Origin: Adineta vaga
Lineage: Eukaryota; Animalia; Rotifera
DNA: 64,000 nucleotides
NCBI GenBank assembly: GCA_021613535.1
Contig: CP075495.1
Span: forward strand, 9,176,001-9,240,000
Direction: 5' to 3'
A program made the position numbers and the translations under genes. Below the pieces are notes generated by a model. That model was not told where the DNA came from and made no database searches. It worked only from the letters and a program-made list of their open reading frames with translations. Shown in pieces: positions 23,418 through 32,983 of the stretch. Positions within the stretch are counted from its first letter, which is position 1; each line of letters opens with the position of its first letter.

Positions 23418-23804
23418 TCAAGGAGAAGGCTTTTTTCTATTGTTACTGTTTGATGTTGGTTTTTTCGTTGTAGATGTTGGTGGTGTTGATGTTCGATCTT
23501 TTTCTTGTTGTTCACGTAAATTTTTGTAATTAGCCCATGTATCTGTATAAGGTCGAAATAGAGTTGATATATATTCTTTTCCTATATCTTGAACTCCTTT
23601 GAAGTCATCTCTCATATCTTTTTTCGTTTTATCCCATCCACCCGCTCGTTCATATTTACCTCGATGTTCAATAAATTTATCCTTGCTCACATTGAAGAAA
23701 TAAGCTGTTAATTGTGCTGCTCGTCGAATTGGATAAGATTCTGATAGGCGACGAATAAGTTCTTCATTATTGGTTAGATAACGCATTAATGAACGCCAAG
23801 GCAT
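23418..23804 (-). CDS. NCBP2AS2: NCBP2-AS2 (HIAR) homolog
   Basis: MPWRSLMRYLTNNEELIRRLSESYPIRRAAQLTAYFF matches the conserved LSESxPIRRAAQLTA motif. Confidence 0.85.
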   Translation of the reverse strand: MPWRSLMRYLTNNEELIRRLSESYPIRRAAQLTAYFFNVSKDKFIEHRGKYERAGGWDKTKKDMRDDFKGVQDIGKEYISTLFRPYTDTWANYKNLREQQEKDRTSTPPTSTTKKPTSNSNNRKKPSP

Positions 23805-24050
23805 GATCAATCTCTTTTTTTTCTTCTAAAAAACAATGTATGTACATAGATAGACAGTACTTCTGTTTTTTTACTGCTTTACAGTTATCAAAAGTCATAG
23901 TTAGTATATTTAAAAACAACAACAAAAATTAAATTGAATACTAAGTATAATACGAGAATAAGAAACAAGCGGAAACAATCACAGTAAAAACTTCTATAAA
24001 TAAAACGAACATTTCAATATCAACGTTCTTATCTGCGTATAGAATAAGTT

Positions 24051-25846
24051 TCAATGACAATTTTGACAATCTTTTGTGCACAATCTGCCTTTGTCAACGC
24101 GACATCGGCAACCACCCGATGTATCACCACGTCCACCTGGACCCCATCGAGGACCACGTGTTGGCCACTATATACGAAATTATTTAAATACATCAACGGA
24201 ACCATCAAACTACTTACACAAATTTCCATTTTACATTGTGTACATTGCAACCAATCACAACCAGATAATTTTTGAATAATTACTCGACAACCGGGACTAA
24301 ATTGTATCGATATTCAACGTAGACAATTAAAATTCAAAGAAAATACTTACCAATGCATCGCTTCACGTCTTTTGATCATCTCCTATAACGAATAGTTTTG
24401 ATATAAATATTAATATGAATCTTATCAATATTCATCTTACCTCTAAATGTTCTTGATCCTTACGAGCTGTTGCGTCATTTGTGGCTCGAATTTTAAGATC
24501 TTCTTGATATTCTAGACCTGCATATATGTTCACAGTTCATAATATTACTCTAATAATTCATCTATGTTACTTACAATTTTGACCTTCATGAACAGCAACA
24601 CAGGTCATGCAGATCCAATGTTTACAACCCTATAAAATACATAGACATAAATTTAAGTATCTGCTATCATTTAACAAAAGTAGACTGTACATACATCACA
24701 ATAGACTATATTATTTCCTTGTACTTGTTCTATAAACCACCATTGTCCACAATCCGGTGTAATACAATGAAATGTTTTATGTCGACTTTCAGCCCAACGT
24801 ACACCAATTTCATTTAATTTATCTACTAATCTTTGCTCACGTTTCATATCTTTCACAACCTTAAGAATAAATCTTTTCAAAATAGAAACAGTTAATAATT
24901 GAGTTTCTTTCTTACACCACGTAATTCTCTTTCACTGATAATCGTTGTACAATCATCATGTGGACATTTCAATAATGGTTCTGTACTTGTTTCAATCATT
25001 TGTAATACACAACGTTTACACATTGGATGTAAACAATGATGAAATAAAAGGCCTTTCGCTTTTCCAATTAATTCATAACAAATAATACATTCAAACTCTT
25101 CATTATTTTTATAATAGGCTGCATGTGCTTGTGCACGTAAGTCTTCTTGAAATGCTTTTGAATCTTCTTGATAACGTAGAAGTTGCTTTTCTTGTTCATG
25201 AATAAAATTCAAGTATTCAACATTTGTCATATAAATACTTTCACATCCAGTACAAATGGTTGCTGAATCATTATTTCCATTATGATGTGAACAAATGACG
25301 CAATACCAATTTGGTGGCTAAAAGAAAACATATATTAAGTGATGAAGAAGAGCTTATTTTTAGTATTCGTTCTACTGGCTTTGTTGTTGGCGCTGTAAAA
25401 TTATTTGATTCATTAATATTTGTAACAATTTTCTGAGACGATGTATCTGATTTGGGTTCGACACTTGTTTGTTCAGGCTATGTATTGAAATCGAAGAATA
25501 GAAAGTCCATGTAACAAAATTTGATATTTACCTGTTGAAATTTAGAATCTTTAAGACATTGATTCAACAGATCTTGACGAAGAACACGACATTTTTTACA
25601 TGATTTTCGTCCTGATTGGTTGTATATATGACAGCTCATACATTCCCAATACGCAGACTAAATACATAAAACTATAAATGAATGAAAGATCTCTTGAAGT
25701 TTTTATTTACCACAGGTGTTACATTCGTAGACAAATCATTATTAGTCTGAAGAAAATATGGATATATCTATATTCCTTCACGAACTCGTTTCGAGTTCTC
25801 AAATAAAACAATATGAACTCACTTTATCAATTGAAGATGTAGCCAT
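24051..25846 (-). CDS. RBCK1: HOIL-1/RBCK1-type RBR E3 ligase: NZF-NZF-RING1-IBR-RING2, no LTM/UBL of its own
   Basis: Spliced: MATSSIDK|...[21 protein letters not shown] (NZF), [22 protein letters not shown] (NZF), [22 protein letters not shown] (RING1), [11 protein letters not shown] (IBR), [30 protein letters not shown]|[38 protein letters not shown] (HOIL-1-specific C-terminus). Confidence 0.9.
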
Positions 25847-25973
25847 GTTGCTTCGATTAAAACCTCATGAATAATATCTAGAATAAGATTTCATATGAAA
25901 ACCTTTATATATGTAAAAATATCACCAATTTAATCAATATTTAAAAAAAAGACTGTTATACAGGTTCAAGGCG

Positions 25974-27365
25974 TTATTCTGTACGTTCAGCGAAACAAAT
26001 TTCACAATGATAACTATTCGGTTCATTTTTGCTTCGACAACTTCGACATGACCAAGGTCCCTATAAAAAGAAACAGGATTGCATTTGAATGGATAAAGAA
26101 AAGTTTTACATTTTCTGTAAACATTTTTCCATATGCTAATTGAAATAAAACAAATGTACTTTGTGGACCGACATGTAAATCAGTCATCGACTCGTCATCA
26201 TGTGCTAAACGACCATTAACAAATATATATTGACTATTAGGTGAACTTTGATAAGTTAATTCAAACTAGACGAAAATACAAACATGTATATGTAAATAAA
26301 GATTCAATTTTCTATACAATTGCACGTAGTTCACGAACAGTTGTTGATGGAAAAACATTCACAGGAATTCTTGGACCATGTTGATCAATACTATATAGGT
26401 TACCATCCAGTTGAACATAGATCCTAGATGTATGTTGAAAAGAGAAAGTTTAGAAACAAAAAGGATTTTTTTCTTTGTATATTTACATCATTTTTGCTTC
26501 ATGTGAATGACCGTTAGATGGTTTCACTTGAATTCGAACACCTGCCGAAGCTAATTGAGTAGCTAATCCAACAGCTTTATCCGTATCACCTTGTCCAATA
26601 CATTCGCCAAGTTCATGTATATGAGGGAGGAGATCTAAAATTTTCATTTTTATTTGAATTATTATATTTTATAAAGATTATTAAAGATATTGAAGACTAA
26701 TAGACATTATTAGTCGAATAGTTATCTGATTTAATATGAATGACGTATAAACTACTTCATCTTTATAGACAATACATAGAGTTTTTCAAAGTCGTTTGAA
26801 TAAAAAAACGTCAACAAAGATTCATCACGATTGATGATATCTGATCATATAGAAAATCCTTACCTTTAGCAGAAATATTTTGTGAATGATCTATGTTATT
26901 AAGATTATCATTAAGCGACGTATTGGTTTGATGATTATTATATTCGGAATCACGAGCACGACCATCTGATGATGCATTTCTAGGCAAATTATTGTATTTT
27001 TTTGTTAATTCGTCATGAAAGTTTGCTCGAGATATCTGATTTAACCAAAATTTGTAAATTCCACTTTTAAAACGTATTTCATCTGGTTGATCATTTGATC
27101 GTCCAAATGTGTACTTGATATCATGTTGAAGAGGAACATTAAAAATTTCCTACAAAAAAAAGATAATTATTTGAAGAAATATTTCACGAAAATTTCATCA
27201 TCTTACGCTTTTATTATCATCTGTATCGACTGCTCTTAATGAATAACTTCTATGATCATAATTTATTAATTCTAATATTGAATTTTCGGAATAATTTCGT
27301 TGACAATTTTTTTGATCGTTTGGAATGTATTGAATACGACATTTACTATATACTTCAATACTCAT
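25974..27365 (-). CDS. SHARPIN: SHARPIN-like protein: PH-like - LTM - UBL - NZF (6 exons)
   Basis: LTM IHELGECIGQGDTDKAVGLATQLASAGVRIQVKP; UBL IYVQLDG..VNVFPSTTVRELRAI|FELTYQSSPNSQYIFVNGRLAHDDESMTDLHV; terminal NZF exon GPWSCRSCRSKNEPNSYHCEICFAERTE* (26060-25974). Confidence 0.8.
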
Positions 27366-27478
27366 ATTATCTAAAATAAGAGAAAAGAAAAAGTAAAACA
27401 ATGTTCTCTATTACGAATAGATTTTTATCACAAAAATTAGTAAATAATAAATTGTCGAAACTATATTGTATATCTTAT

Positions 27479-28805
27479 TCACTGTTCAATTATAAATAGT
27501 ACAAAAAGTGAATCAGAACGAATATTTAAATCATTCATAGTAAAATTGTCGTGTGCCAAATGACCATTTACAAAAAAATGTTGATATATTGGTGAGAATT
27601 TATGAGAAGATTCAAACTATTCGAATAAGAAAGAAAAGACTTATCATTTTCAATACAGAAAAATAGAAATATTCTTACAGCATTACGGAGTTCACGTATT
27701 GTTGTAGATGGATACACATTCATTACAAGTTCCTCGTCTTGATTCTCATTTCTCCATTGATTACCGTCAATTTTTACTTTAATTCTATTTAGTTCAATAA
27801 TACTAATGTGAATAAAGACGAACGAATAGATTTTATTTTTCTTTACTTACGGAATGGTTTTTTCTTCTGGTTGGTTTTTGTTCCATAAACTAGCTTTTAA
27901 TTGAACACGTGCTTCAGCTAATTTCTTTGCTAAATCAACAGCTTCTGTATCGTGGCCTAATCTAATTTGTTCACCCAATTGATAAATATTCACCAAAATA
28001 TCTACAATGAAATTTAGCGAATAATTTTGTGACTATTCTTCATCATTGAAAATATTTACAAACAGACTGAAATCTAAGATTTGCTTTTGTAAGAATACTG
28101 AATATTCTCAATATTGTGAATCTTATCATTGAAAGAAAGTGAAAATTTATAAATCGATGATAAATATCATTATTACATGCTAATAAATTCTATTCACATC
28201 CTCAATTCTATGTCAAAACTAGTAACAACTTTTCAAATTATAAATGTCAAAATCAACGGACAGTTGTAAAAGAACCTAGATACAAATGTTATCTTTGAAG
28301 TATATTGAATATCTTACCGTTTTGATTGATACGTGATGCTGGTTTAGGATCCTTTGATGGATGTGATTTTGAAGGAGTTTGTTGATAAATTGGTACACTC
28401 GTTGATTCGTTATTTAAACTGCTTATTTGTTCAAAACAAGTGTCTAATGCTTCATGAAAGTTCGTTCGTAATGCCGAGTTCAACCATAAAAGATACGTTC
28501 CATTTTCACTTTGAACTTCATCAGGATGATTTGGTGATTGCCCATATTTATATAGATTTTTTTGTTTTAAAGGAATATTAAAGATTTCCTAGAAAAAGAA
28601 AATCTTATTTTCACAAACAAATAATGAAGTTAATTCATTGTTTTACTTCTTTATTGTTTGCTATATCAATAGCTAATAAGGAATAATCGGCAAAATCAAA
28701 TTGTTTTAATTGAACTAGTGATCTATCCGAATAGTTTCGCACGGAATTTCGTTGTTCATTAGTTAAAAATTGAATACGACATGTACTATAAGCAGCAAGA
28801 CTCAT
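27479..28805 (-). CDS. SHARPIN-like paralogue 2: PH-like - LTM - UBL, no NZF
   Basis: MSLAAYSTCRIQFLTNEQRNSVRNYSD aligns with MSIEVYSKCRIQYIPNDQKNCQRNYSE; LTM IYQLGEQIRLGHDTEAVDLAKKLAEARVQLKA; UBL MNVYPSTTIRELRNA|FESSHKFSPIYQHFFVNGHLAHDNFTMNDLNI..LFVLFIIEQ*. Confidence 0.8.
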
Positions 28806-29075
28806 TTGATCTAAAGAAATCAATAAAAATTCAAATAATTACATATATCTGATGCAAAAAATTCTTCTCAAAGCAACAAACTAATGAACATTTAATAAAT
28901 AACTTATTCTACATACTTCCTCAGTTGCAAGCAATCTTGCAGATGTTTTTTAACTAAACATAGAGGTCTCTATCTCTCTTTCTATTGGTGAAGAAGAAAA
29001 AAAGTCATTGACTATATTTTGACTGCACTATATTAGTTAGGTTGGTTTTTTTCCTTTTGATTTCAAAATAAACAA

Positions 29076-29572
29076 ATGTCTTCACATCTATGGCCAATAA
29101 ATGAAACATCAAAAGTGAATGGATTATGGTTTCGACCATTACAACCTGGTAGGAATCATTTTTCTTTTGTATATACATACAATTTTTTCTTCTTCAAATC
29201 GTTTAGTTCGAGAAGATATTAGCTTAGCTAAATTTGAAGATATACTTGAACAAGAACGACGACGTTATGTAGAGAAAGGTTTCATTTTCGAATTTATAAT
29301 TTACATTTCGAAGATTATCTTGTTCAATTTTAGGTTTAAATTTACCATTTCATGGGCGAACTGAAATGGATAATGGTGATGTATGTATATAATTTCAAGA
29401 AAAACACAATCAAATTTCAAACTATTTGTTGTTTTTTGTTCACTAGGATGATGAAGACGGTGATGAAGCTGAAGAAGAAAGTGAAGGCGGTGAACAAGAT
29501 GATGAAATGGATGCTCAACAAGGTCCTGGTTCGCCAGGAAATGGAACGAATGTTAGTGTTGGTGTGGCATAA
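29076..29572 (+). CDS. ANAPC15: Anaphase-promoting complex subunit 15 (4 short exons)
   Basis: MSSHLWPINETSKVNGLWFRPLQP|VREDISLAKFEDILEQERRRYVEK|GLNLPFHGR followed by an acidic tail, matching APC15 layout (LWF, EK..L.P.G, D/E tail). Confidence 0.7.
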
Positions 29573-29692
29573 GATATATAATATTCAATAGATTCTTTTT
29601 CTTTGTCAGATTTATATTGATAAAAATATTCAGTGAATAAATGTTTCTTTTTTTTTCTTATACAAGTGTTATGTTTACTTCTAGTTTCAGAT

Positions 29693-30800
29693 ATGTCATC
29701 AAATCGCCAGTAAGAAATATAAAAAAGAAAAGAATAAAATTCAATATGTATGTTTTATTTTTGTTACTTTTTTCCTTTGTAAAGAGAATTTGATGTGGCA
29801 GTGGTACGAATTCGCTCCAAACATAAGGATACAACCGATACATATTCAAAAAATATTAAAATTTGTCCTCCACATGATGGATATACTCATTATACTATGC
29901 GAATCGAAAAACAATGAGTTATCGAATTTTTTCGTACACTTACAAGAAACCATCGATTAATAACACTAACCAATAGATTTAGCTAAACTTGTTCACGCTT
30001 TGCTAGAAACTGACCTAATCCAAGATGAAATCAATGATTAATTATGGATCTCTTTATCTGTGAAGTTTAGTGCATGGTTAATTTTTAAAAGGCAGCTATT
30101 ATCGACAACTACTATATATAATAAATGTAATGCTTCACTGTCAAACAAATGAATCATTCGTTCATGTCGACTTCTACTTGTTTTACAATTGTAGACTCGA
30201 CAGAATCAATAGTTGATAGTCTAATACAATCGATGTATGCAGGTTCTTTACATACTGCGAATATTATGCAGACTGGCTAAATTCAAACCGAATGTTCAAT
30301 TTAACTTATCCAATAAAACTGACAAGGAAATTTCATCAAAACATTACAATGTTGATAAATAACCATCAGATGCTGTTCTTCAGTAAGTAAGTACATGACA
30401 CAATTACTCTTGCCTAACTTAACTCATCATTTAGATTGACAATTCAAATTGAATTTCAAATATCGAAAGATCCTATTGAAGTAACAATCACGGTACATTT
30501 TGGTACAACTGTAAGCTCATTGAAAGAACAAGTTTGTGCTTATAAGAGTATGTCTTTGATCTACATCGAAATAATAATTTAGATCGAAAGAGAAACATGA
30601 ATCAGAACTACTGATGAATATTGGTTTGCTTCTCGTCGATATTCCTCTTGGATGAACATGTCTTTAGTTCTTTCGTACCTGTTGATTTAAATCGAACTCA
30701 AATACAGCACTCTATGCATCCGATTCATTCGGGTGATACATCACTCAATCGTCTTTTCTATATTAAGATAACTGAAGTGGTTGTTTTCTGTTATATTCTA
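29693..30800 (+). pseudogene. Decayed SHARPIN-like (PH-LTM-UBL) paralogue 3
   Basis: LTM remnant SIVDSLIQSMYAGSLHTAN../RLAKFKPNVQFNL; UBL LTIQIEFQISKDPIEVTITVHFGTTVSSLKEQ|IERET*IRTTDEYWF; same intron positions as the paralogues; in-frame stops at ~30039, 30360, 30598 plus frameshifts. Confidence 0.65.
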
Positions 30801-31011
30801 TATTTTTTCTGACGTAAACGTTGCTCTTAGTCTCTAAATTTAAGTACTATCATTAATCTTGAGGTCTATGAGTAATTTAAATGGTACTGACATTGTTCCA
30901 ATATTAAAAAGATTTCTAATACACCTCTGATTTATCCTCCGTGTCAGCGCATTTATTAAATATTTTCTGAGAAGAATTTACATCTTTGACTTTCTATTCT
31001 AGATCTTTTCC

Positions 31012-32163
31012 ATGTTGCTGTAAGCTCTACCTAGTTCTTTTTCTCAACTAGATAATATTTCTTATTCGTAATATTATAGAATTGGTCGTGTATTCAATGT
31101 TACAATCAAAGATGAGGCTAATCCTGACCTTATCAGAAAATATTCCAGTGTGAATTTACAATTGTCAAGAACTAATCCAAAGCTCACTGTTCAAGTTCCG
31201 CCTGATAATATGGTATTTCCTTGCTATAATATAATTTCGTTTACAGTAATTTTGTTCTATAGTCTGTTTATGAAGTTTATCTCAATAATTGTTCTTATCT
31301 TTTACAATCATCAATTCCGGGTAGTGTTGAGTGTATTGTTGATAATACTAACCAGAAAAAAGTGGTTATCCACGATAAAAACAAAGAAGCTAAAGATTTA
31401 CTAACATATATGCGAGATTATTTGCAGAGTAAGTAATTTATTAGATGTCATTCATGAAAAGCCATTATTTGTTTTTATTAGATCGATCTACTGAACCTGA
31501 CGTTCCAAAACCTGCACCTCCTGATAACGAAAAAGTAGAGAGGCTGATTACAGCAATGAGTAGCAAGAATGCAGATAGTGCTGCTCAAATAGCACGTCAA
31601 CTTGCTAACGAGAGAGCGTTAGTTCAATTCAGTTTGGGTATGATAAATGAATCTGGAAATGCAGCACCACCGCCACCGCCACCAGCATCTTGATGTGCCT
31701 CTCAAGTAAATATGAAATGAATCTACTCTTAATAACATGTCTAAGATTGAAACTTCCAAAAATCTATATACAATTGTTTGGACAAAAAACATTCTATTTG
31801 ATCGAACTTAGCAAAGTACAAAGATTATATCTATTAATACTTTTTTATTCTATTATTTAGATTGAAATTATCGATTGAAAGTTACCTAATTGATCATTGT
31901 ATCGATAGAGAATTTGATATTACTATTCTTCGTGGAACAACCATCAGAAATTTGAAAGAAATGGTAAACACTTTTGAGAATATTCCTTGTACAAATAAAA
32001 TTAGTCTTTTTCATTCTAGGTTGCCCATGAAATCGGAATCAATATTGAACAACAGTATTGGTACATTAATCGAGATCATCTGTCGAATGATTATACATTT
32101 GGTTTGTCCAAACCAAGTGTTACTGAACAAACAATACTTATTTTATACATTTCTAAATCTTAA
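31012..32163 (+). CDS. SHARPIN-like paralogue 4 (PH-like - LTM - UBL) with a frameshift in the Pro-rich linker (possible young pseudogene)
   Basis: MLL|IGRVFNVTIKD..|SVYEVYLNN..AKDLLTYMRDYLQ; LTM KVERLITAMSSKNADSAAQIARQLANERALVQFSL; UBL LKLSIES..ILRGTTIRNLKEM|VAHEIGINIEQQYWYINRDHLSNDYTF..LILYISKS*; the LTM frame hits TGA at 31691 before the donor. Confidence 0.7.
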
Positions 32164-32315: not shown

Positions 32316-32983
32316 ATGAAAACAATTATAGTCTTTTACATTTTGATTATAATGGGACTTACATCTTTTGCACAAAAATGGCAAATACACATAAGTCATT
32401 GTAATTTACTTGAAATTAAAAAATATCATCCAAATGTAACAGCAATTGTTAATGCAGCAAATGTTTATATGAGAGGAGGTAAGAATTATAGATCGATAAG
32501 ATATTCTATTTTTGAAAATAAATAGGTGGTGGTCTTGATGGTGCTATTCATAAAGCAGCTGGTTCGGAATTATTAACTGAATTAAAACAATTGGTTCCCG
32601 ATAAAACTCAAACAGCTCAAGTGATAATTACACAAGGATATAAAACTGGTTTTTCTCATATTTTACATGTCGCTGGACCAGTTTATTCCACATCGAATCC
32701 TGATGAATCTCGACGCTTACTTGAAGCAACCTATACAAATATTGTACGAGAAGCTGATCAATTGAAAACAATCGATACACTTGGATTAGCATCGATTAGT
32801 ACAGGTATCTATGGTTATCCATTGAAGGATGCAGCACCAGTTGCTATTTCAACAATTGCTCTTGAATTATCAAAATCCGAACATTTAAAAACGGTTATTT
32901 TTGCTATGTTTGGTAAACAAGAATACGATGTATTCACTAAAGCTTATGAACAATGGAAACAAAAACATGAAAAAGATTTGTAA
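32316..32983 (+). CDS. Macrodomain ADP-ribosylhydrolase (MacroD/YmdB-like) with N-terminal hydrophobic signal-like peptide; intron 32479-32525
   Basis: AIVNAANVYMRGG|GGLDGAIHKAAG, ILHVAGPVY, ASISTGIYGYP; N-terminus MKTIIVFYILIIMGLTSFAQ. Confidence 0.92.

What the first reader, a model, noticed from the sequence alone, without database searches (positions are those of the whole stretch)
24051..32163. Clustered, modular LUBAC-like locus: one HOIL-1-type RBR ligase plus four SHARPIN-like PH-LTM-UBL paralogues
Seen in sequence: five units in ~8 kb. They are NZF-NZF-RBR with the HOIL-1 C-terminus and catalytic GCDW Cys (24051-25846), PH-LTM-UBL-NZF (25974-27365), PH-LTM-UBL (27479-28805), a decayed copy (29693-30800) and a frameshifted copy (31012-32163). 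All four SHARPIN-like copies share an LTM-type helix pair, a phase-2 intron before the UBL and a phase-0 intron just after TTxxxL(R/K), so they are true paralogues despite heavy divergence. Established: in mammals HOIL-1 (LTM-UBL-NZF-RBR) and SHARPIN (PH-LTM-UBL-NZF) are unlinked single genes that dimerise through their LTMs and bind HOIP through their UBLs. Inference: this lineage has an expanded birth-and-death family of interchangeable LUBAC adaptor or decoy subunits physically linked to the ligase, possibly a diversifying innate-immune ubiquitin system. The PH assignment rests on position and secondary-structure pattern only.
Basis: partly seen in the sequence, partly recalled or inferred. 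Interest (0 to 1): 0.85.

Follow-up and report, generated by a model that had tools for sequence, protein, structure and literature searches.

The report
Split, expanded SHARPIN/HOIL-1 gene cluster
In the bdelloid rotifer Adineta vaga, the single animal gene that gave rise to the SHARPIN and HOIL-1 subunits of the mammalian linear-ubiquitin ligase complex has been split into two neighbouring genes and its front half copied several times, and I could not find the complex's main enzyme, HOIP, in this genome.

Summary

**What is at window 24051-32163 (Adineta vaga chr 2)**
- An intact, expressed HOIL-1/RBCK1-type RBR ligase gene (g1, 404 aa).
- Directly upstream, on the same strand, two intact, expressed genes: g2 (PH-fold, LTM, UBL, RanBP2 zinc finger) and g3 (PH-fold, LTM, UBL).
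- On the other strand, g5, an expressed divergent copy with a +1 frameshift, and g4, of which only a decayed UBL is left.

**Support**
- The LTM-UBL unit is homologous to SHARPIN/HOIL-1: hhalign probability 98%, E 2e-14, and the best Foldseek hit is the LUBAC core structure 5Y3T.
- The gene order is conserved in A. ricciae and Rotaria magnacalcarata.

**Re-reading**
- Amphioxus, a hemichordate, fish and birds carry one unsplit PH-LTM-UBL-NZF-RBR gene. So g2 plus g1 look like a fission of that gene, and g3, g4 and g5 like copies of its front half.
- A chr 3 paralogue fuses the PH domain straight to the RBR.
- The PH domain is EVH1/Ran-binding-like and does not match Sharpin_PH by sequence.
- HOIP and OTULIN were not detected, so "LUBAC adaptor" is unsupported. 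The immune role was not tested.

**Earlier notes of this scan**
- One note already covers the chr 5 sister locus (s1-484682).
- Another raised the split-HOIL-1 idea on this same window (s1-502233).

The parts
24051..25846 (-). g1: HOIL-1/RBCK1-type RBR ligase gene, 404 aa (two RanBP2-type fingers, RING1, IBR, RING2, HOIL-1 tail). Exons: 25823-25846, 25711-25746, 25532-25657, 25376-25477, 24916-25317, 24695-24859, 24575-24629, 24441-24517, 24351-24382, 24218-24296, 24051-24167.
   Evidence: Canonical splice sites. The first two introns appear in RNA contigs. 89% identical over all 404 aa to A. ricciae P0065. PDB hits are HOIL-1 only. Pfam IBR is above its cut-off in P0065.
24051..24296 (-). RING2 exon (24218-24296, with the GCDW catalytic-cysteine motif) and the HOIL-1-specific cysteine-rich tail exon (24051-24167).
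   Evidence: Pfam IBR_1 E 3.4e-4 on the RING2 exon. The tail aligns to human RBCK1 residues up to the C-terminus at E 2.5e-12. A second copy of the tail lies only on chr 3.
25974..27365 (-). g2: PH-fold, LTM, UBL, RanBP2 finger; 313 aa. Exons: 27207-27365, 26864-27149 (PH), 26487-26634 (LTM), 26318-26423 and 26110-26265 (UBL), 25974-26060 (finger and stop).
   Evidence: Model. Four introns are joints in RNA contigs and the first shows only as a 9-letter contig end; the 3' end lies near 25923. Pfam LTM E 3.5e-5, RanBP finger E 4.3e-6, ubiquitin E 0.026. 41-47% identical to A. steineri P0016 and P0051.
27479..28805 (-). g3: PH-fold, LTM, UBL, no finger; 274 aa. Exons: 28647-28805, 28318-28588, 27851-28001, 27679-27784, 27479-27616.
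   Evidence: Model. RNA joints, including acceptor 27784. Pfam LTM E 3.2e-4. 49-56% identical to P0013 and to the first half of P0001.
30435..30740 (+). g4 relic: UBL exon 1 (30435-30531) and a frame-broken UBL exon 2 (from 30583). It is transcribed and spliced, but a stop comes 5 codons into exon 2.
   Evidence: tblastn with the chr 5 copy gives 46% identity, E 1e-6. RNA joint 30386 to 30443, and contig ends at 30531 and 30583. Read directly from the sequence.
31012..32163 (+). g5: a divergent PH-like, LTM, UBL copy. Exons: 31012-31019, 31080-31212, 31263-31428, 31482-31705 (LTM, stops in frame), 31861-31963, 32020-32163 (UBL).
   Evidence: Models and donor/acceptor scan. RNA joint 31212 to 31263 and a spliced contig end at 31430. 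One extra base compared with A. ricciae. The LTM profile of this subfamily matches the g2/g3 family at hhalign probability 81%, E 1.2e-5.
29119..29572 (+). Context, not part of the family: an acidic-tail gene between g3 and g4 (introns 29277-29331 and 29381-29446). Its counterparts in other bdelloids are ANAPC15.
   Evidence: RNA joints. PF15243 is recorded on the gene at the same position in A. steineri, A. ricciae and R. magnacalcarata. The window's own exons get no Pfam hit, so the name rests on synteny.

Best explanation
This is a bdelloid-specific rearrangement of the animal SHARPIN/HOIL-1 gene family.

Origin (inferred)
- The ancestral animal gene encoded PH, LTM, UBL, NZF and RBR in one protein. 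It still does in amphioxus, a hemichordate, gar and swan.
- In the bdelloid lineage this gene broke between zinc fingers into two adjacent, co-oriented genes. g2 kept PH-LTM-UBL-finger. g1 kept finger-finger-RBR and gained its own start codon.
- The front half was then duplicated in tandem, giving g3 and the two divergent g4/g5-type copies.
- A further copy on chr 3 lost the middle, leaving PH-RBR.

Function (inferred, not shown)
- g1 is an active stand-alone HOIL-1-type ligase. It keeps every zinc ligand, the GCDW catalytic cysteine and the HOIL-1 tail. In mammals this enzyme makes ester-linked ubiquitin marks.
- g2, g3 and the g5 type are non-catalytic adaptors that pair through their LTMs, as SHARPIN and HOIL-1L do, and present UBL and PH-fold surfaces.
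- They work with g1 without HOIP. The evidence for a working link is the conserved gene neighbourhood and the natural PH-RBR fusion.

State of the copies
- g4 is a dead relic. g5 is broken in this assembly.
For: Identity of g1
- PDB matches are HOIL-1 only.
- 34-39% identical to vertebrate RBCK1 from the finger to the C-terminus.

Homology of the LTM-UBL unit
- The bdelloid family aligns to the front halves of the deuterostome proteins at hhalign probability 98.3%, E 2.3e-14, over 136 collinear columns.
- Foldseek's best hit for the orthologue model is 5y3t_A, HOIL-1L LTM-UBL (E 8.8e-8). SHARPIN chain 5y3t_C scores 8e-5.
- Pfam LTM and ubiquitin exceed their cut-offs in orthologues.
- The deuterostome profile, run exon by exon, picks this cluster's LTM, UBL and finger exons as its top hits, at the right profile positions.

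PH fold
- AlphaFold model, pLDDT 91: seven strands plus a C-terminal helix. Z 13.7 to EVH1 and Ran-binding domains.

Unsplit ancestral architecture
- Pfam on P0201, P0215, P0202 and P0190.

Separate transcripts
- g1 has its own two 5' exons and g2 its own 3' end in RNA contigs.
- The g1 start is kept in A. ricciae, Rotaria and Didymodactylos.

PH-RBR in one exon on chr 3
- (P0003).

Conserved cluster
-.

HOIP not detected
-.
Against: - The PH domain gives no Sharpin_PH signal: no Pfam hit, hhalign probability 1.2%, and the SHARPIN PH structure is not among the 50 best structural matches. It could be a separate acquisition.
- g1 has no LTM or UBL, so nothing known would tether it to the adaptors.
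- The fingers lack the Thr-Phe pair of ubiquitin-binding NZFs (read from the sequence).
- The absence of HOIP rests on exon-level six-frame profile scans, and there was no genome here in which those scans could be shown to work.
- No protostome outside bdelloids was examined for the split. The one annelid protein seen (P0185) has UBL-NZF-RBR and no recognised PH.
- Seven RNA joints were not listed, so a rare g2-g1 joined mRNA is not excluded.
Confidence: 0.6

Rival explanations
1. These are interchangeable adaptor or decoy subunits of a true LUBAC. Their UBLs dock on the UBA of a rotifer HOIP, and the expansion serves a diversifying innate-immune linear-ubiquitin system.
For: - The LTM-UBL unit is the part that binds HOIP and pairs SHARPIN with HOIL-1L in mammals (5Y3T is the best structural hit).
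- RNF31 is reported as widely conserved in animals, Spiralia included (PMC12778051).
- The adaptors diverge fast between A. vaga and A. ricciae: g2 exons 38-51% and g3 exons 61-71% identical, against 89% for g1.
Against: - No LDD (PF18091), no HOIP-UBA except the UBA of DDI1, no PUB near an RBR, and no OTULIN in the whole genome.
- The 20 RBR loci read look like ARIH, RNF216, RNF144, RNF19 and RNF14, with two odd ones; none is HOIP-like.
- No immune or selection test was done.
Confidence: 0.15
2. g2 and g1 are still one gene. Read-through and splicing from g2 exon 5 (phase 0) to the g1 finger exon at 25657 (phase 0) would yield a full PH-LTM-UBL-NZF-RBR protein alongside a short SHARPIN-like isoform.
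For: - Same strand, only 127 bases between the stop and the ATG, and compatible intron phases.
- This idea was noted earlier on this window (s1-502233).
- Seven joints of the RNA table were not shown.
Against: - All four runs splice g2 exon 5 to its own last exon, and contigs end near 25923.
- Three runs splice g1's own exons 25823 to 25746 and 25711 to 25657.
- The g1 start and first residues are conserved across three other bdelloid genera.
Confidence: 0.1
3. The N-terminal PH-fold domain is not SHARPIN's PH. It is an EVH1/Ran-binding-like domain captured independently, so the SHARPIN-like layout of g2 is convergent.
For: - The best structural and language-model neighbours are EVH1/WH1 and Ran-binding domains.
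- No Sharpin_PH signal by Pfam or hhalign.
Against: - It has the same position and the same order as in amphioxus and hemichordate proteins, whose own Sharpin_PH scores are barely above the cut-off (27.5 and 32.4 bits). Strong divergence is therefore plausible.
- Both are PH-superfold domains.
Confidence: 0.3

Closest known systems
Unsplit PH-LTM-UBL-NZF-RBR proteins of deuterostomes, annotated 'sharpin' or 'RBCK1' in amphioxus, Ptychodera, gar and swan (P0201, P0215, P0202, P0190)
   Same: - The same domains in the same order as g2 followed by g1.
- The LTM-UBL unit is homologous (hhalign probability 98%).
- The RBR and the tail are homologous.
   Different: - In bdelloids the reading frame is broken into two genes with separate transcripts.
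- There are three fingers instead of one.
- The PH domain is not recognisable as Sharpin_PH.
- Extra copies of the front half exist.
Mammalian LUBAC accessory subunits HOIL-1L (LTM-UBL-NZF-RBR) and SHARPIN (PH-LTM-UBL-NZF); core structure 5Y3T (PMC6044281)
   Same: - g2 has SHARPIN's domain layout.
- g1 has HOIL-1's catalytic half, including the unusual tail.
- A ligase-free paralogue has arisen next to a ligase-bearing one.
   Different: - g1 lacks the LTM and UBL that tie HOIL-1L to SHARPIN and HOIP.
- The genes are adjacent instead of unlinked.
- There are 3-4 adaptor copies.
- The fingers lack the Thr-Phe ubiquitin-binding pair.
- No HOIP partner was found.
Drosophila LUBEL, a HOIP orthologue that works without HOIL-1L, SHARPIN or OTULIN (PMC5090701, PMC5413910)
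   Same: A lineage that keeps only part of the LUBAC gene set.
   Different: It is the mirror image. Flies keep HOIP and lack the accessory genes. Bdelloids keep and expand the accessory genes, and HOIP was not detected.
EVH1/WH1 and Ran-binding domains (PH superfold)
   Same: The N-terminal domain superposes on ENAH EVH1 and the RanBP3 Ran-binding domain at Z 13.7, rmsd 2.3-2.5 Å, over 104-113 residues.
   Different: Sequence identity is 7-15%. No ligand-binding residues were checked. A shared fold does not show a shared function.

Membership tests
HOIL-1/RBCK1 ligase (g1) | RING1-IBR-RING2 (RBR) core | tested here: met
   Exon-level hits to RING, IBR and IBR_1. IBR is above its cut-off in the 89%-identical orthologue P0065. 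RING1 is closest to human RBCK1 in the PDB.
HOIL-1/RBCK1 ligase (g1) | HOIL-1-specific cysteine-rich C-terminal tail after RING2, and the GCDW catalytic cysteine | tested here: met
   The 38-aa last exon hits only RBCK1 chains, E 2.5e-12, aligned to the very C-terminus. The GCDW motif was read from the translation. That this cysteine is catalytic is established knowledge, not tested here.
HOIL-1/RBCK1 ligase (g1) | N-terminal LTM and UBL that bind SHARPIN and HOIP | tested here: not met
   g1 starts with 20 residues and a zinc finger, and no LTM or ubiquitin hit falls on any g1 exon or on P0065. These domains sit in the upstream gene g2.
HOIL-1/RBCK1 ligase (g1) | Npl4-type zinc finger that binds ubiquitin | tested here: inconclusive
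   Two fingers fit the W-x-C-x2-C...C-x2-C motif, and the second aligns with the finger region of shark RBCK1. Pfam gives no hit, and the Thr-Phe pair is absent (read from the sequence).
SHARPIN-like adaptor (g2, g3) | LTM (LUBAC tethering motif, PF25393) | tested here: met
   g2 exon: 24.1 bits, E 3.5e-5. g3 exon: 21 bits, E 3.2e-4. Both are just under the 27.5-bit cut-off. The fused orthologue P0001 reaches 36.4 bits, above it. hhalign to the deuterostome family gives probability 98%.
SHARPIN-like adaptor (g2, g3) | UBL directly after the LTM, of the HOIL-1L/SHARPIN kind | tested here: met
   Ubiquitin family scores 31.6 bits, above its cut-off, in P0016. The LTM plus UBL of the model is closest to 5y3t_A and 5y3t_C. 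The profile hit to 5y3t_A spans both parts.
SHARPIN-like adaptor (g2, g3) | N-terminal PH domain of the Sharpin_PH family (PF16764) | tested here: not met
   The fold is PH superfold. There is no PF16764 hit, hhalign to a Sharpin_PH alignment gives probability 1.2%, and no SHARPIN chain turns up in a PDB profile search.
SHARPIN-like adaptor (g2, g3) | C-terminal NZF | tested here: inconclusive
   g2 has a RanBP2-type finger at 26.3 bits against a cut-off of 27, without the Thr-Phe pair. g3 has none.
LUBAC (linear ubiquitin chain assembly complex) | HOIP/RNF31 with an RBR-LDD catalytic end and a UBA that takes the UBLs | tested here: not met
   PF18091 gives 0 candidates. The one PF16678 hit is the UBA of DDI1. 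No PUB lies near an RBR. 20 RBR loci were read by eye and none is HOIP-like. There was no positive control, so absence is likely but not proven.
LUBAC (linear ubiquitin chain assembly complex) | Met1-linked chain synthesis, with OTULIN as the matching deubiquitinase | not testable with these tools
   OTULIN (PF16218) gave no match. The chain type needs biochemistry.

The most novel reading that the evidence does not exclude
Bdelloid rotifers have lost HOIP but kept, split and multiplied the HOIL-1 ligase and its LTM-UBL tethering partners. If so, the LTM-UBL module and the PH domain have an older job, independent of HOIP, in steering HOIL-1's ester-type ubiquitination. The natural PH-RBR, finger-RBR and PH-LTM-UBL genes would then be ready-made separation-of-function variants for finding that job.
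Probability: 0.3. Interest if true: 0.75.

Novelty: new variant of a known kind. Interest (0 to 1): 0.55.

Why it matters
- HOIL-1 and SHARPIN are studied almost only as helpers of HOIP in mammalian immunity and cell death.
- Here a lineage keeps these helpers under selection. g1 is 89% identical between two Adineta species, and the cluster is conserved into Rotaria. Yet the main enzyme is not detectable.
- That makes the question 'what do HOIL-1 and the LTM-UBL module do on their own?' directly testable.
- It also brings out a point that is little noticed. The ancestral animal gene carried SHARPIN's and HOIL-1's domains in one protein, so mammalian SHARPIN and the bdelloid adaptors are parallel losses of the ligase half.
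- If a HOIP turns up, what remains is an ordinary, though tidy, lineage-specific gene-family expansion.

Tried and rejected
- **Complex prediction.** The g2 LTM exon with the g3 LTM exon gave 'no answer' (score 0.02, chains folded without alignments). It is evidence neither way.
- **PDB search with the g2 LTM exon alone.** phmmer found nothing.
- **Sharpin_PH.** No Pfam hit on any exon or orthologue. hhalign of the PH profiles gave probability 1.2%. A PDB profile search with the PH alignment gave nothing relevant.
- **HOIP-UBA hit on chr 4.** It turned out to be the UBA of DDI1, next to a retropepsin domain.
- **PUB.** The hits are not near any RBR.
- **Degenerate DNA pattern.** I built it for a HOIP LDD motif recalled from memory. 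It gave only chance, non-coding matches. This is weak, because the motif was not taken from a tool.
- **ESM Atlas.** Searches by features and by shape gave only WH1, Ran-binding and PH leads.
- **Papers.** None links rotifers with LUBAC terms. The supplement of PMC12778051 names no rotifer. A search on phylogenetic distribution found nothing useful.
- **g4 as a PH-LTM-UBL gene.** Rejected. Only the UBL part can be recognised.
- **A phase-correct alternative splice for g5.** The only candidate is a weak donor at 31618 that would cut the LTM. It is not supported.
- **Not done.** dN/dS was not computed, because synonymous sites between the available species are probably saturated.
- **How spliced proteins were handled.** They were never sent to the search, fold or complex tools. 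Those tools received single exons by reference, or database orthologues. Exons were joined only inside the sandbox, for local BLAST against loci and proteins already fetched.

Full report
**Source and method**

The window is Adineta vaga chromosome 2, positions 9176001-9240000, in a 100.8-Mb, six-contig assembly. The species name comes from the record of a paralogous protein. The DNA is about 30% G+C, with short GT..AG introns.

I built gene models by hand from stop-free frames and splice sites. I checked them against spliced contigs of four public runs laid on 25500-31499, which is 6,000 letters. The runs are only guessed to be RNA. However, their contigs skip exactly the predicted introns, so they behave as transcript assemblies.

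Spliced proteins were never sent to any search, fold or complex tool. Those tools received single exons by reference, or full-length database orthologues. Exons were joined only inside the sandbox, for local BLAST.

**g1, the ligase**

- g1 has eleven exons between 25846 and 24051 on the minus strand and gives 404 aa without a stop.
- The contigs show a 36-nt exon (25711-25746) between the 8-codon first exon and the first finger exon.
- The model is 89% identical over all 404 residues to A. ricciae P0065.
- The last exon matches only human RBCK1/HOIL-1 chains in the PDB, up to the final residue (E 2.5e-12). The RING1 exon also finds RBCK1 first.
- RING2 carries the GCDW motif.
- From the second finger to the end, g1 aligns with shark RBCK1 at 39% identity.
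- g1 has no LTM and no UBL.
- Its two fingers fit the RanBP2/NZF cysteine pattern. They get no Pfam hit and lack the Thr-Phe pair of ubiquitin-binding NZFs.

**g2 and g3**

- g2 (313 aa) and g3 (274 aa) lie directly upstream on the same strand. Both are intact, and the contigs show their introns as predicted, apart from the first g2 intron, which appears only as a short contig end, and the g3 acceptor noted next.
- g3 uses acceptor 27784, six codons downstream of the one I first chose.
- Their third exons hit Pfam LTM at E 3.5e-5 and 3.2e-4. The g2 last exon is a RanBP2-type finger.
- A profile of the second PH exon found 45 proteins among 1.84 billion. All the named ones among those I looked up are bdelloid.
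- Full-length orthologues pass the Pfam cut-offs for ubiquitin (P0016) and LTM (P0001).
- The AlphaFold model of P0051, which is 47% identical to g2, has pLDDT 85. Its best Foldseek match in the whole PDB is the HOIL-1L LTM-UBL chain of the LUBAC core, 5y3t_A (E 8.8e-8, 133 columns). The SHARPIN chain scores 8e-5.

**The N-terminal domain**

- Residues 1-116 of the model form seven strands and a long C-terminal helix, at pLDDT above 90.
- The domain superposes best on EVH1 and Ran-binding domains (Z 13.7).
- Membership of Sharpin_PH is not met: there is no Pfam hit, and hhalign gives probability 1.2%.

**g4 and g5**

- g5 has the same exon plan as an intact chr 5 gene, including a 166-nt second PH exon and the same intron phases.
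- Its LTM exon runs into a stop and is out of phase with the UBL exon. Compared with A. ricciae there is one extra base in the proline-coding run. I could not lay reads there, so an assembly error is not excluded.
- Eight LTM exons of this subfamily from five species align to the g2/g3 family at hhalign probability 81%, E 1.2e-5. Three of them hit Pfam LTM on their own.
- g4 keeps only a UBL exon and a frame-broken second one. Contigs run unspliced from the upstream acidic-tail gene through the supposed g4 start, but they do splice the two UBL introns.

**Other copies in the genome**

- The tail exon of g1 occurs once more, on chr 3. That gene, P0003 (380 aa), has the PH domain joined to RING1 within a single exon, with no LTM, UBL or finger. 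The same type occurs in A. steineri and Rotaria.
- The chr 5 region that is syntenic with the window carries the same GPCR and acidic-tail genes. It holds only a g3-type gene (P0002) and an intact g5-type gene.

**Conservation of the cluster**

- A. ricciae has the same order as the window: Macro, g5-type, g4-type, ANAPC15, then g3, g2, g1, a small gene and the GPCR.
- R. magnacalcarata has that order too, with an extra copy of the g1 front half inserted into g2. This yields a finger-finger-LTM-UBL-finger gene model, P0054.
- A. steineri and Rotaria sp. Silwood1 loci have g3 followed by g2, but no g1. These are probably the sister locus.
- Between A. vaga and A. ricciae, g1 is 89% identical. 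The g3 exons are 61-71% identical, the g2 exons 38-51%, and the g5 parts 30-54%.

**The wider family**

- A search from a barnacle HOIL-1-like protein brought in many 600-740-aa proteins named 'sharpin' or 'RBCK1'.
- Those of amphioxus, Ptychodera, gar and swan carry Sharpin_PH, LTM and/or UBL, NZF and a full RBR in one chain.
- HOIL-1-type RBRs also occur in an annelid, arthropods, an echinoderm and a tunicate.
- The bdelloid family aligns to the front halves of the deuterostome proteins at hhalign probability 98.3%, E 2.3e-14, across LTM and UBL.
- That deuterostome profile, run exon by exon on the window and its sister stretches, puts the cluster's LTM, finger and UBL exons at the top.
- The simplest reading is therefore that g2 plus g1 are a fission of this ancestral gene, and that g3, g4 and g5 are copies of its front half.
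- Separate transcripts and a g1 start conserved in four genera argue that the fission is real and old.

**HOIP**

- Six-frame Pfam scans of the whole genome found no LDD and no OTULIN. The one HOIP-UBA hit is the UBA of DDI1, and no PUB lies near an RBR.
- The same kind of scan did find the weak LTM exons and 56 RING2 matches, so it is not blind.
- 20 of the roughly 50 RBR loci were fetched. They look like ARIH, RNF216, RNF144, RNF19 and RNF14, plus two odd ones.
- Published work describes the opposite case in Drosophila: HOIP without HOIL-1L, SHARPIN or OTULIN (PMC5090701, PMC5413910).

**How it probably works (inference)**

- g1 is a stand-alone HOIL-1-type ligase.
- g2, g3 and the g5 type are ligase-free adaptors that pair through their LTMs.
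- The conserved neighbourhood and the PH-RBR fusion point to joint action with g1.
- Nothing here shows binding. The complex test gave no answer.

**Verdict**

The locus is real and coherent. It is a new variant of a known family, not a new kind of system. The 'LUBAC' and 'immune' labels are unsupported.

Noticed in passing
G000 chr 3: 13075694-13077257 (L007:3695-5257, minus strand): A paralogue, P0003 (380 aa), in which the PH-fold domain and the HOIL-1 RBR form one protein. The second PH half and RING1 share a single exon. Orthologues occur in A. steineri and Rotaria.
   Followed up: partly
G000 chr 5: 8382131-8385670 (L016:6131-9670): The sister locus has the same flanking GPCR and acidic-tail genes. 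It holds only a g3-type gene (P0002) and an intact 266-aa g5-type gene on opposite strands, with no RBR.
   Followed up: yes
L025:9043-11702 (Rotaria magnacalcarata): A copy of the front half of g1 (two fingers) sits inside the g2 position. It splits g2 into a PH-only gene model and a finger-finger-LTM-UBL-finger model (P0054). This is either domain shuffling or a mis-annotation.
   Followed up: partly
P0190, P0202, P0201, P0215: Proteins named 'sharpin' in birds and reptiles, and 'RBCK1' in fish, amphioxus and a hemichordate, carry Sharpin_PH together with a complete RBR. So the ligase-free SHARPIN of mammals looks like a derived state.
   Followed up: partly
window 32316-32983, plus strand: A macro-domain gene (Pfam Macro, E 2.4e-16) lies right after g5. 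It holds the same position next to the cluster in A. ricciae and R. magnacalcarata.
   Followed up: partly
window 29447-30386 and 30698-31080: RNA contigs run on from the acidic-tail (ANAPC15-like) gene through the g4 relic. One contig links 30698-31019 to g5 exon 2. This suggests read-through transcription or long untranslated regions on the plus strand.
   Followed up: no
window 29861, 30258, 30267-30269, 30644: Most or all of the four runs (each of these indels is in three or four of them) show small insertions relative to the window, and 1-6% base differences in g4/g5. The reads therefore come from a divergent allele or strain.
   Followed up: no
window 23421-23810, minus strand: A 130-aa open frame between g1 and the GPCR gene has no Pfam hit. 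A small gene of 87-131 aa sits at the same place in A. ricciae and R. magnacalcarata.
   Followed up: no
G000, 56 places; L037 = chr 4: 9390500-9396700; L028 = chr 6: 12692500-12698700: The genome holds many RBR genes, including a run of similar ones with 200-270-aa open frames. One odd gene combines a CCCH finger, a RING2-like finger and a C-terminal UBL. Another is an RBR followed by a ZZ finger.
   Followed up: partly
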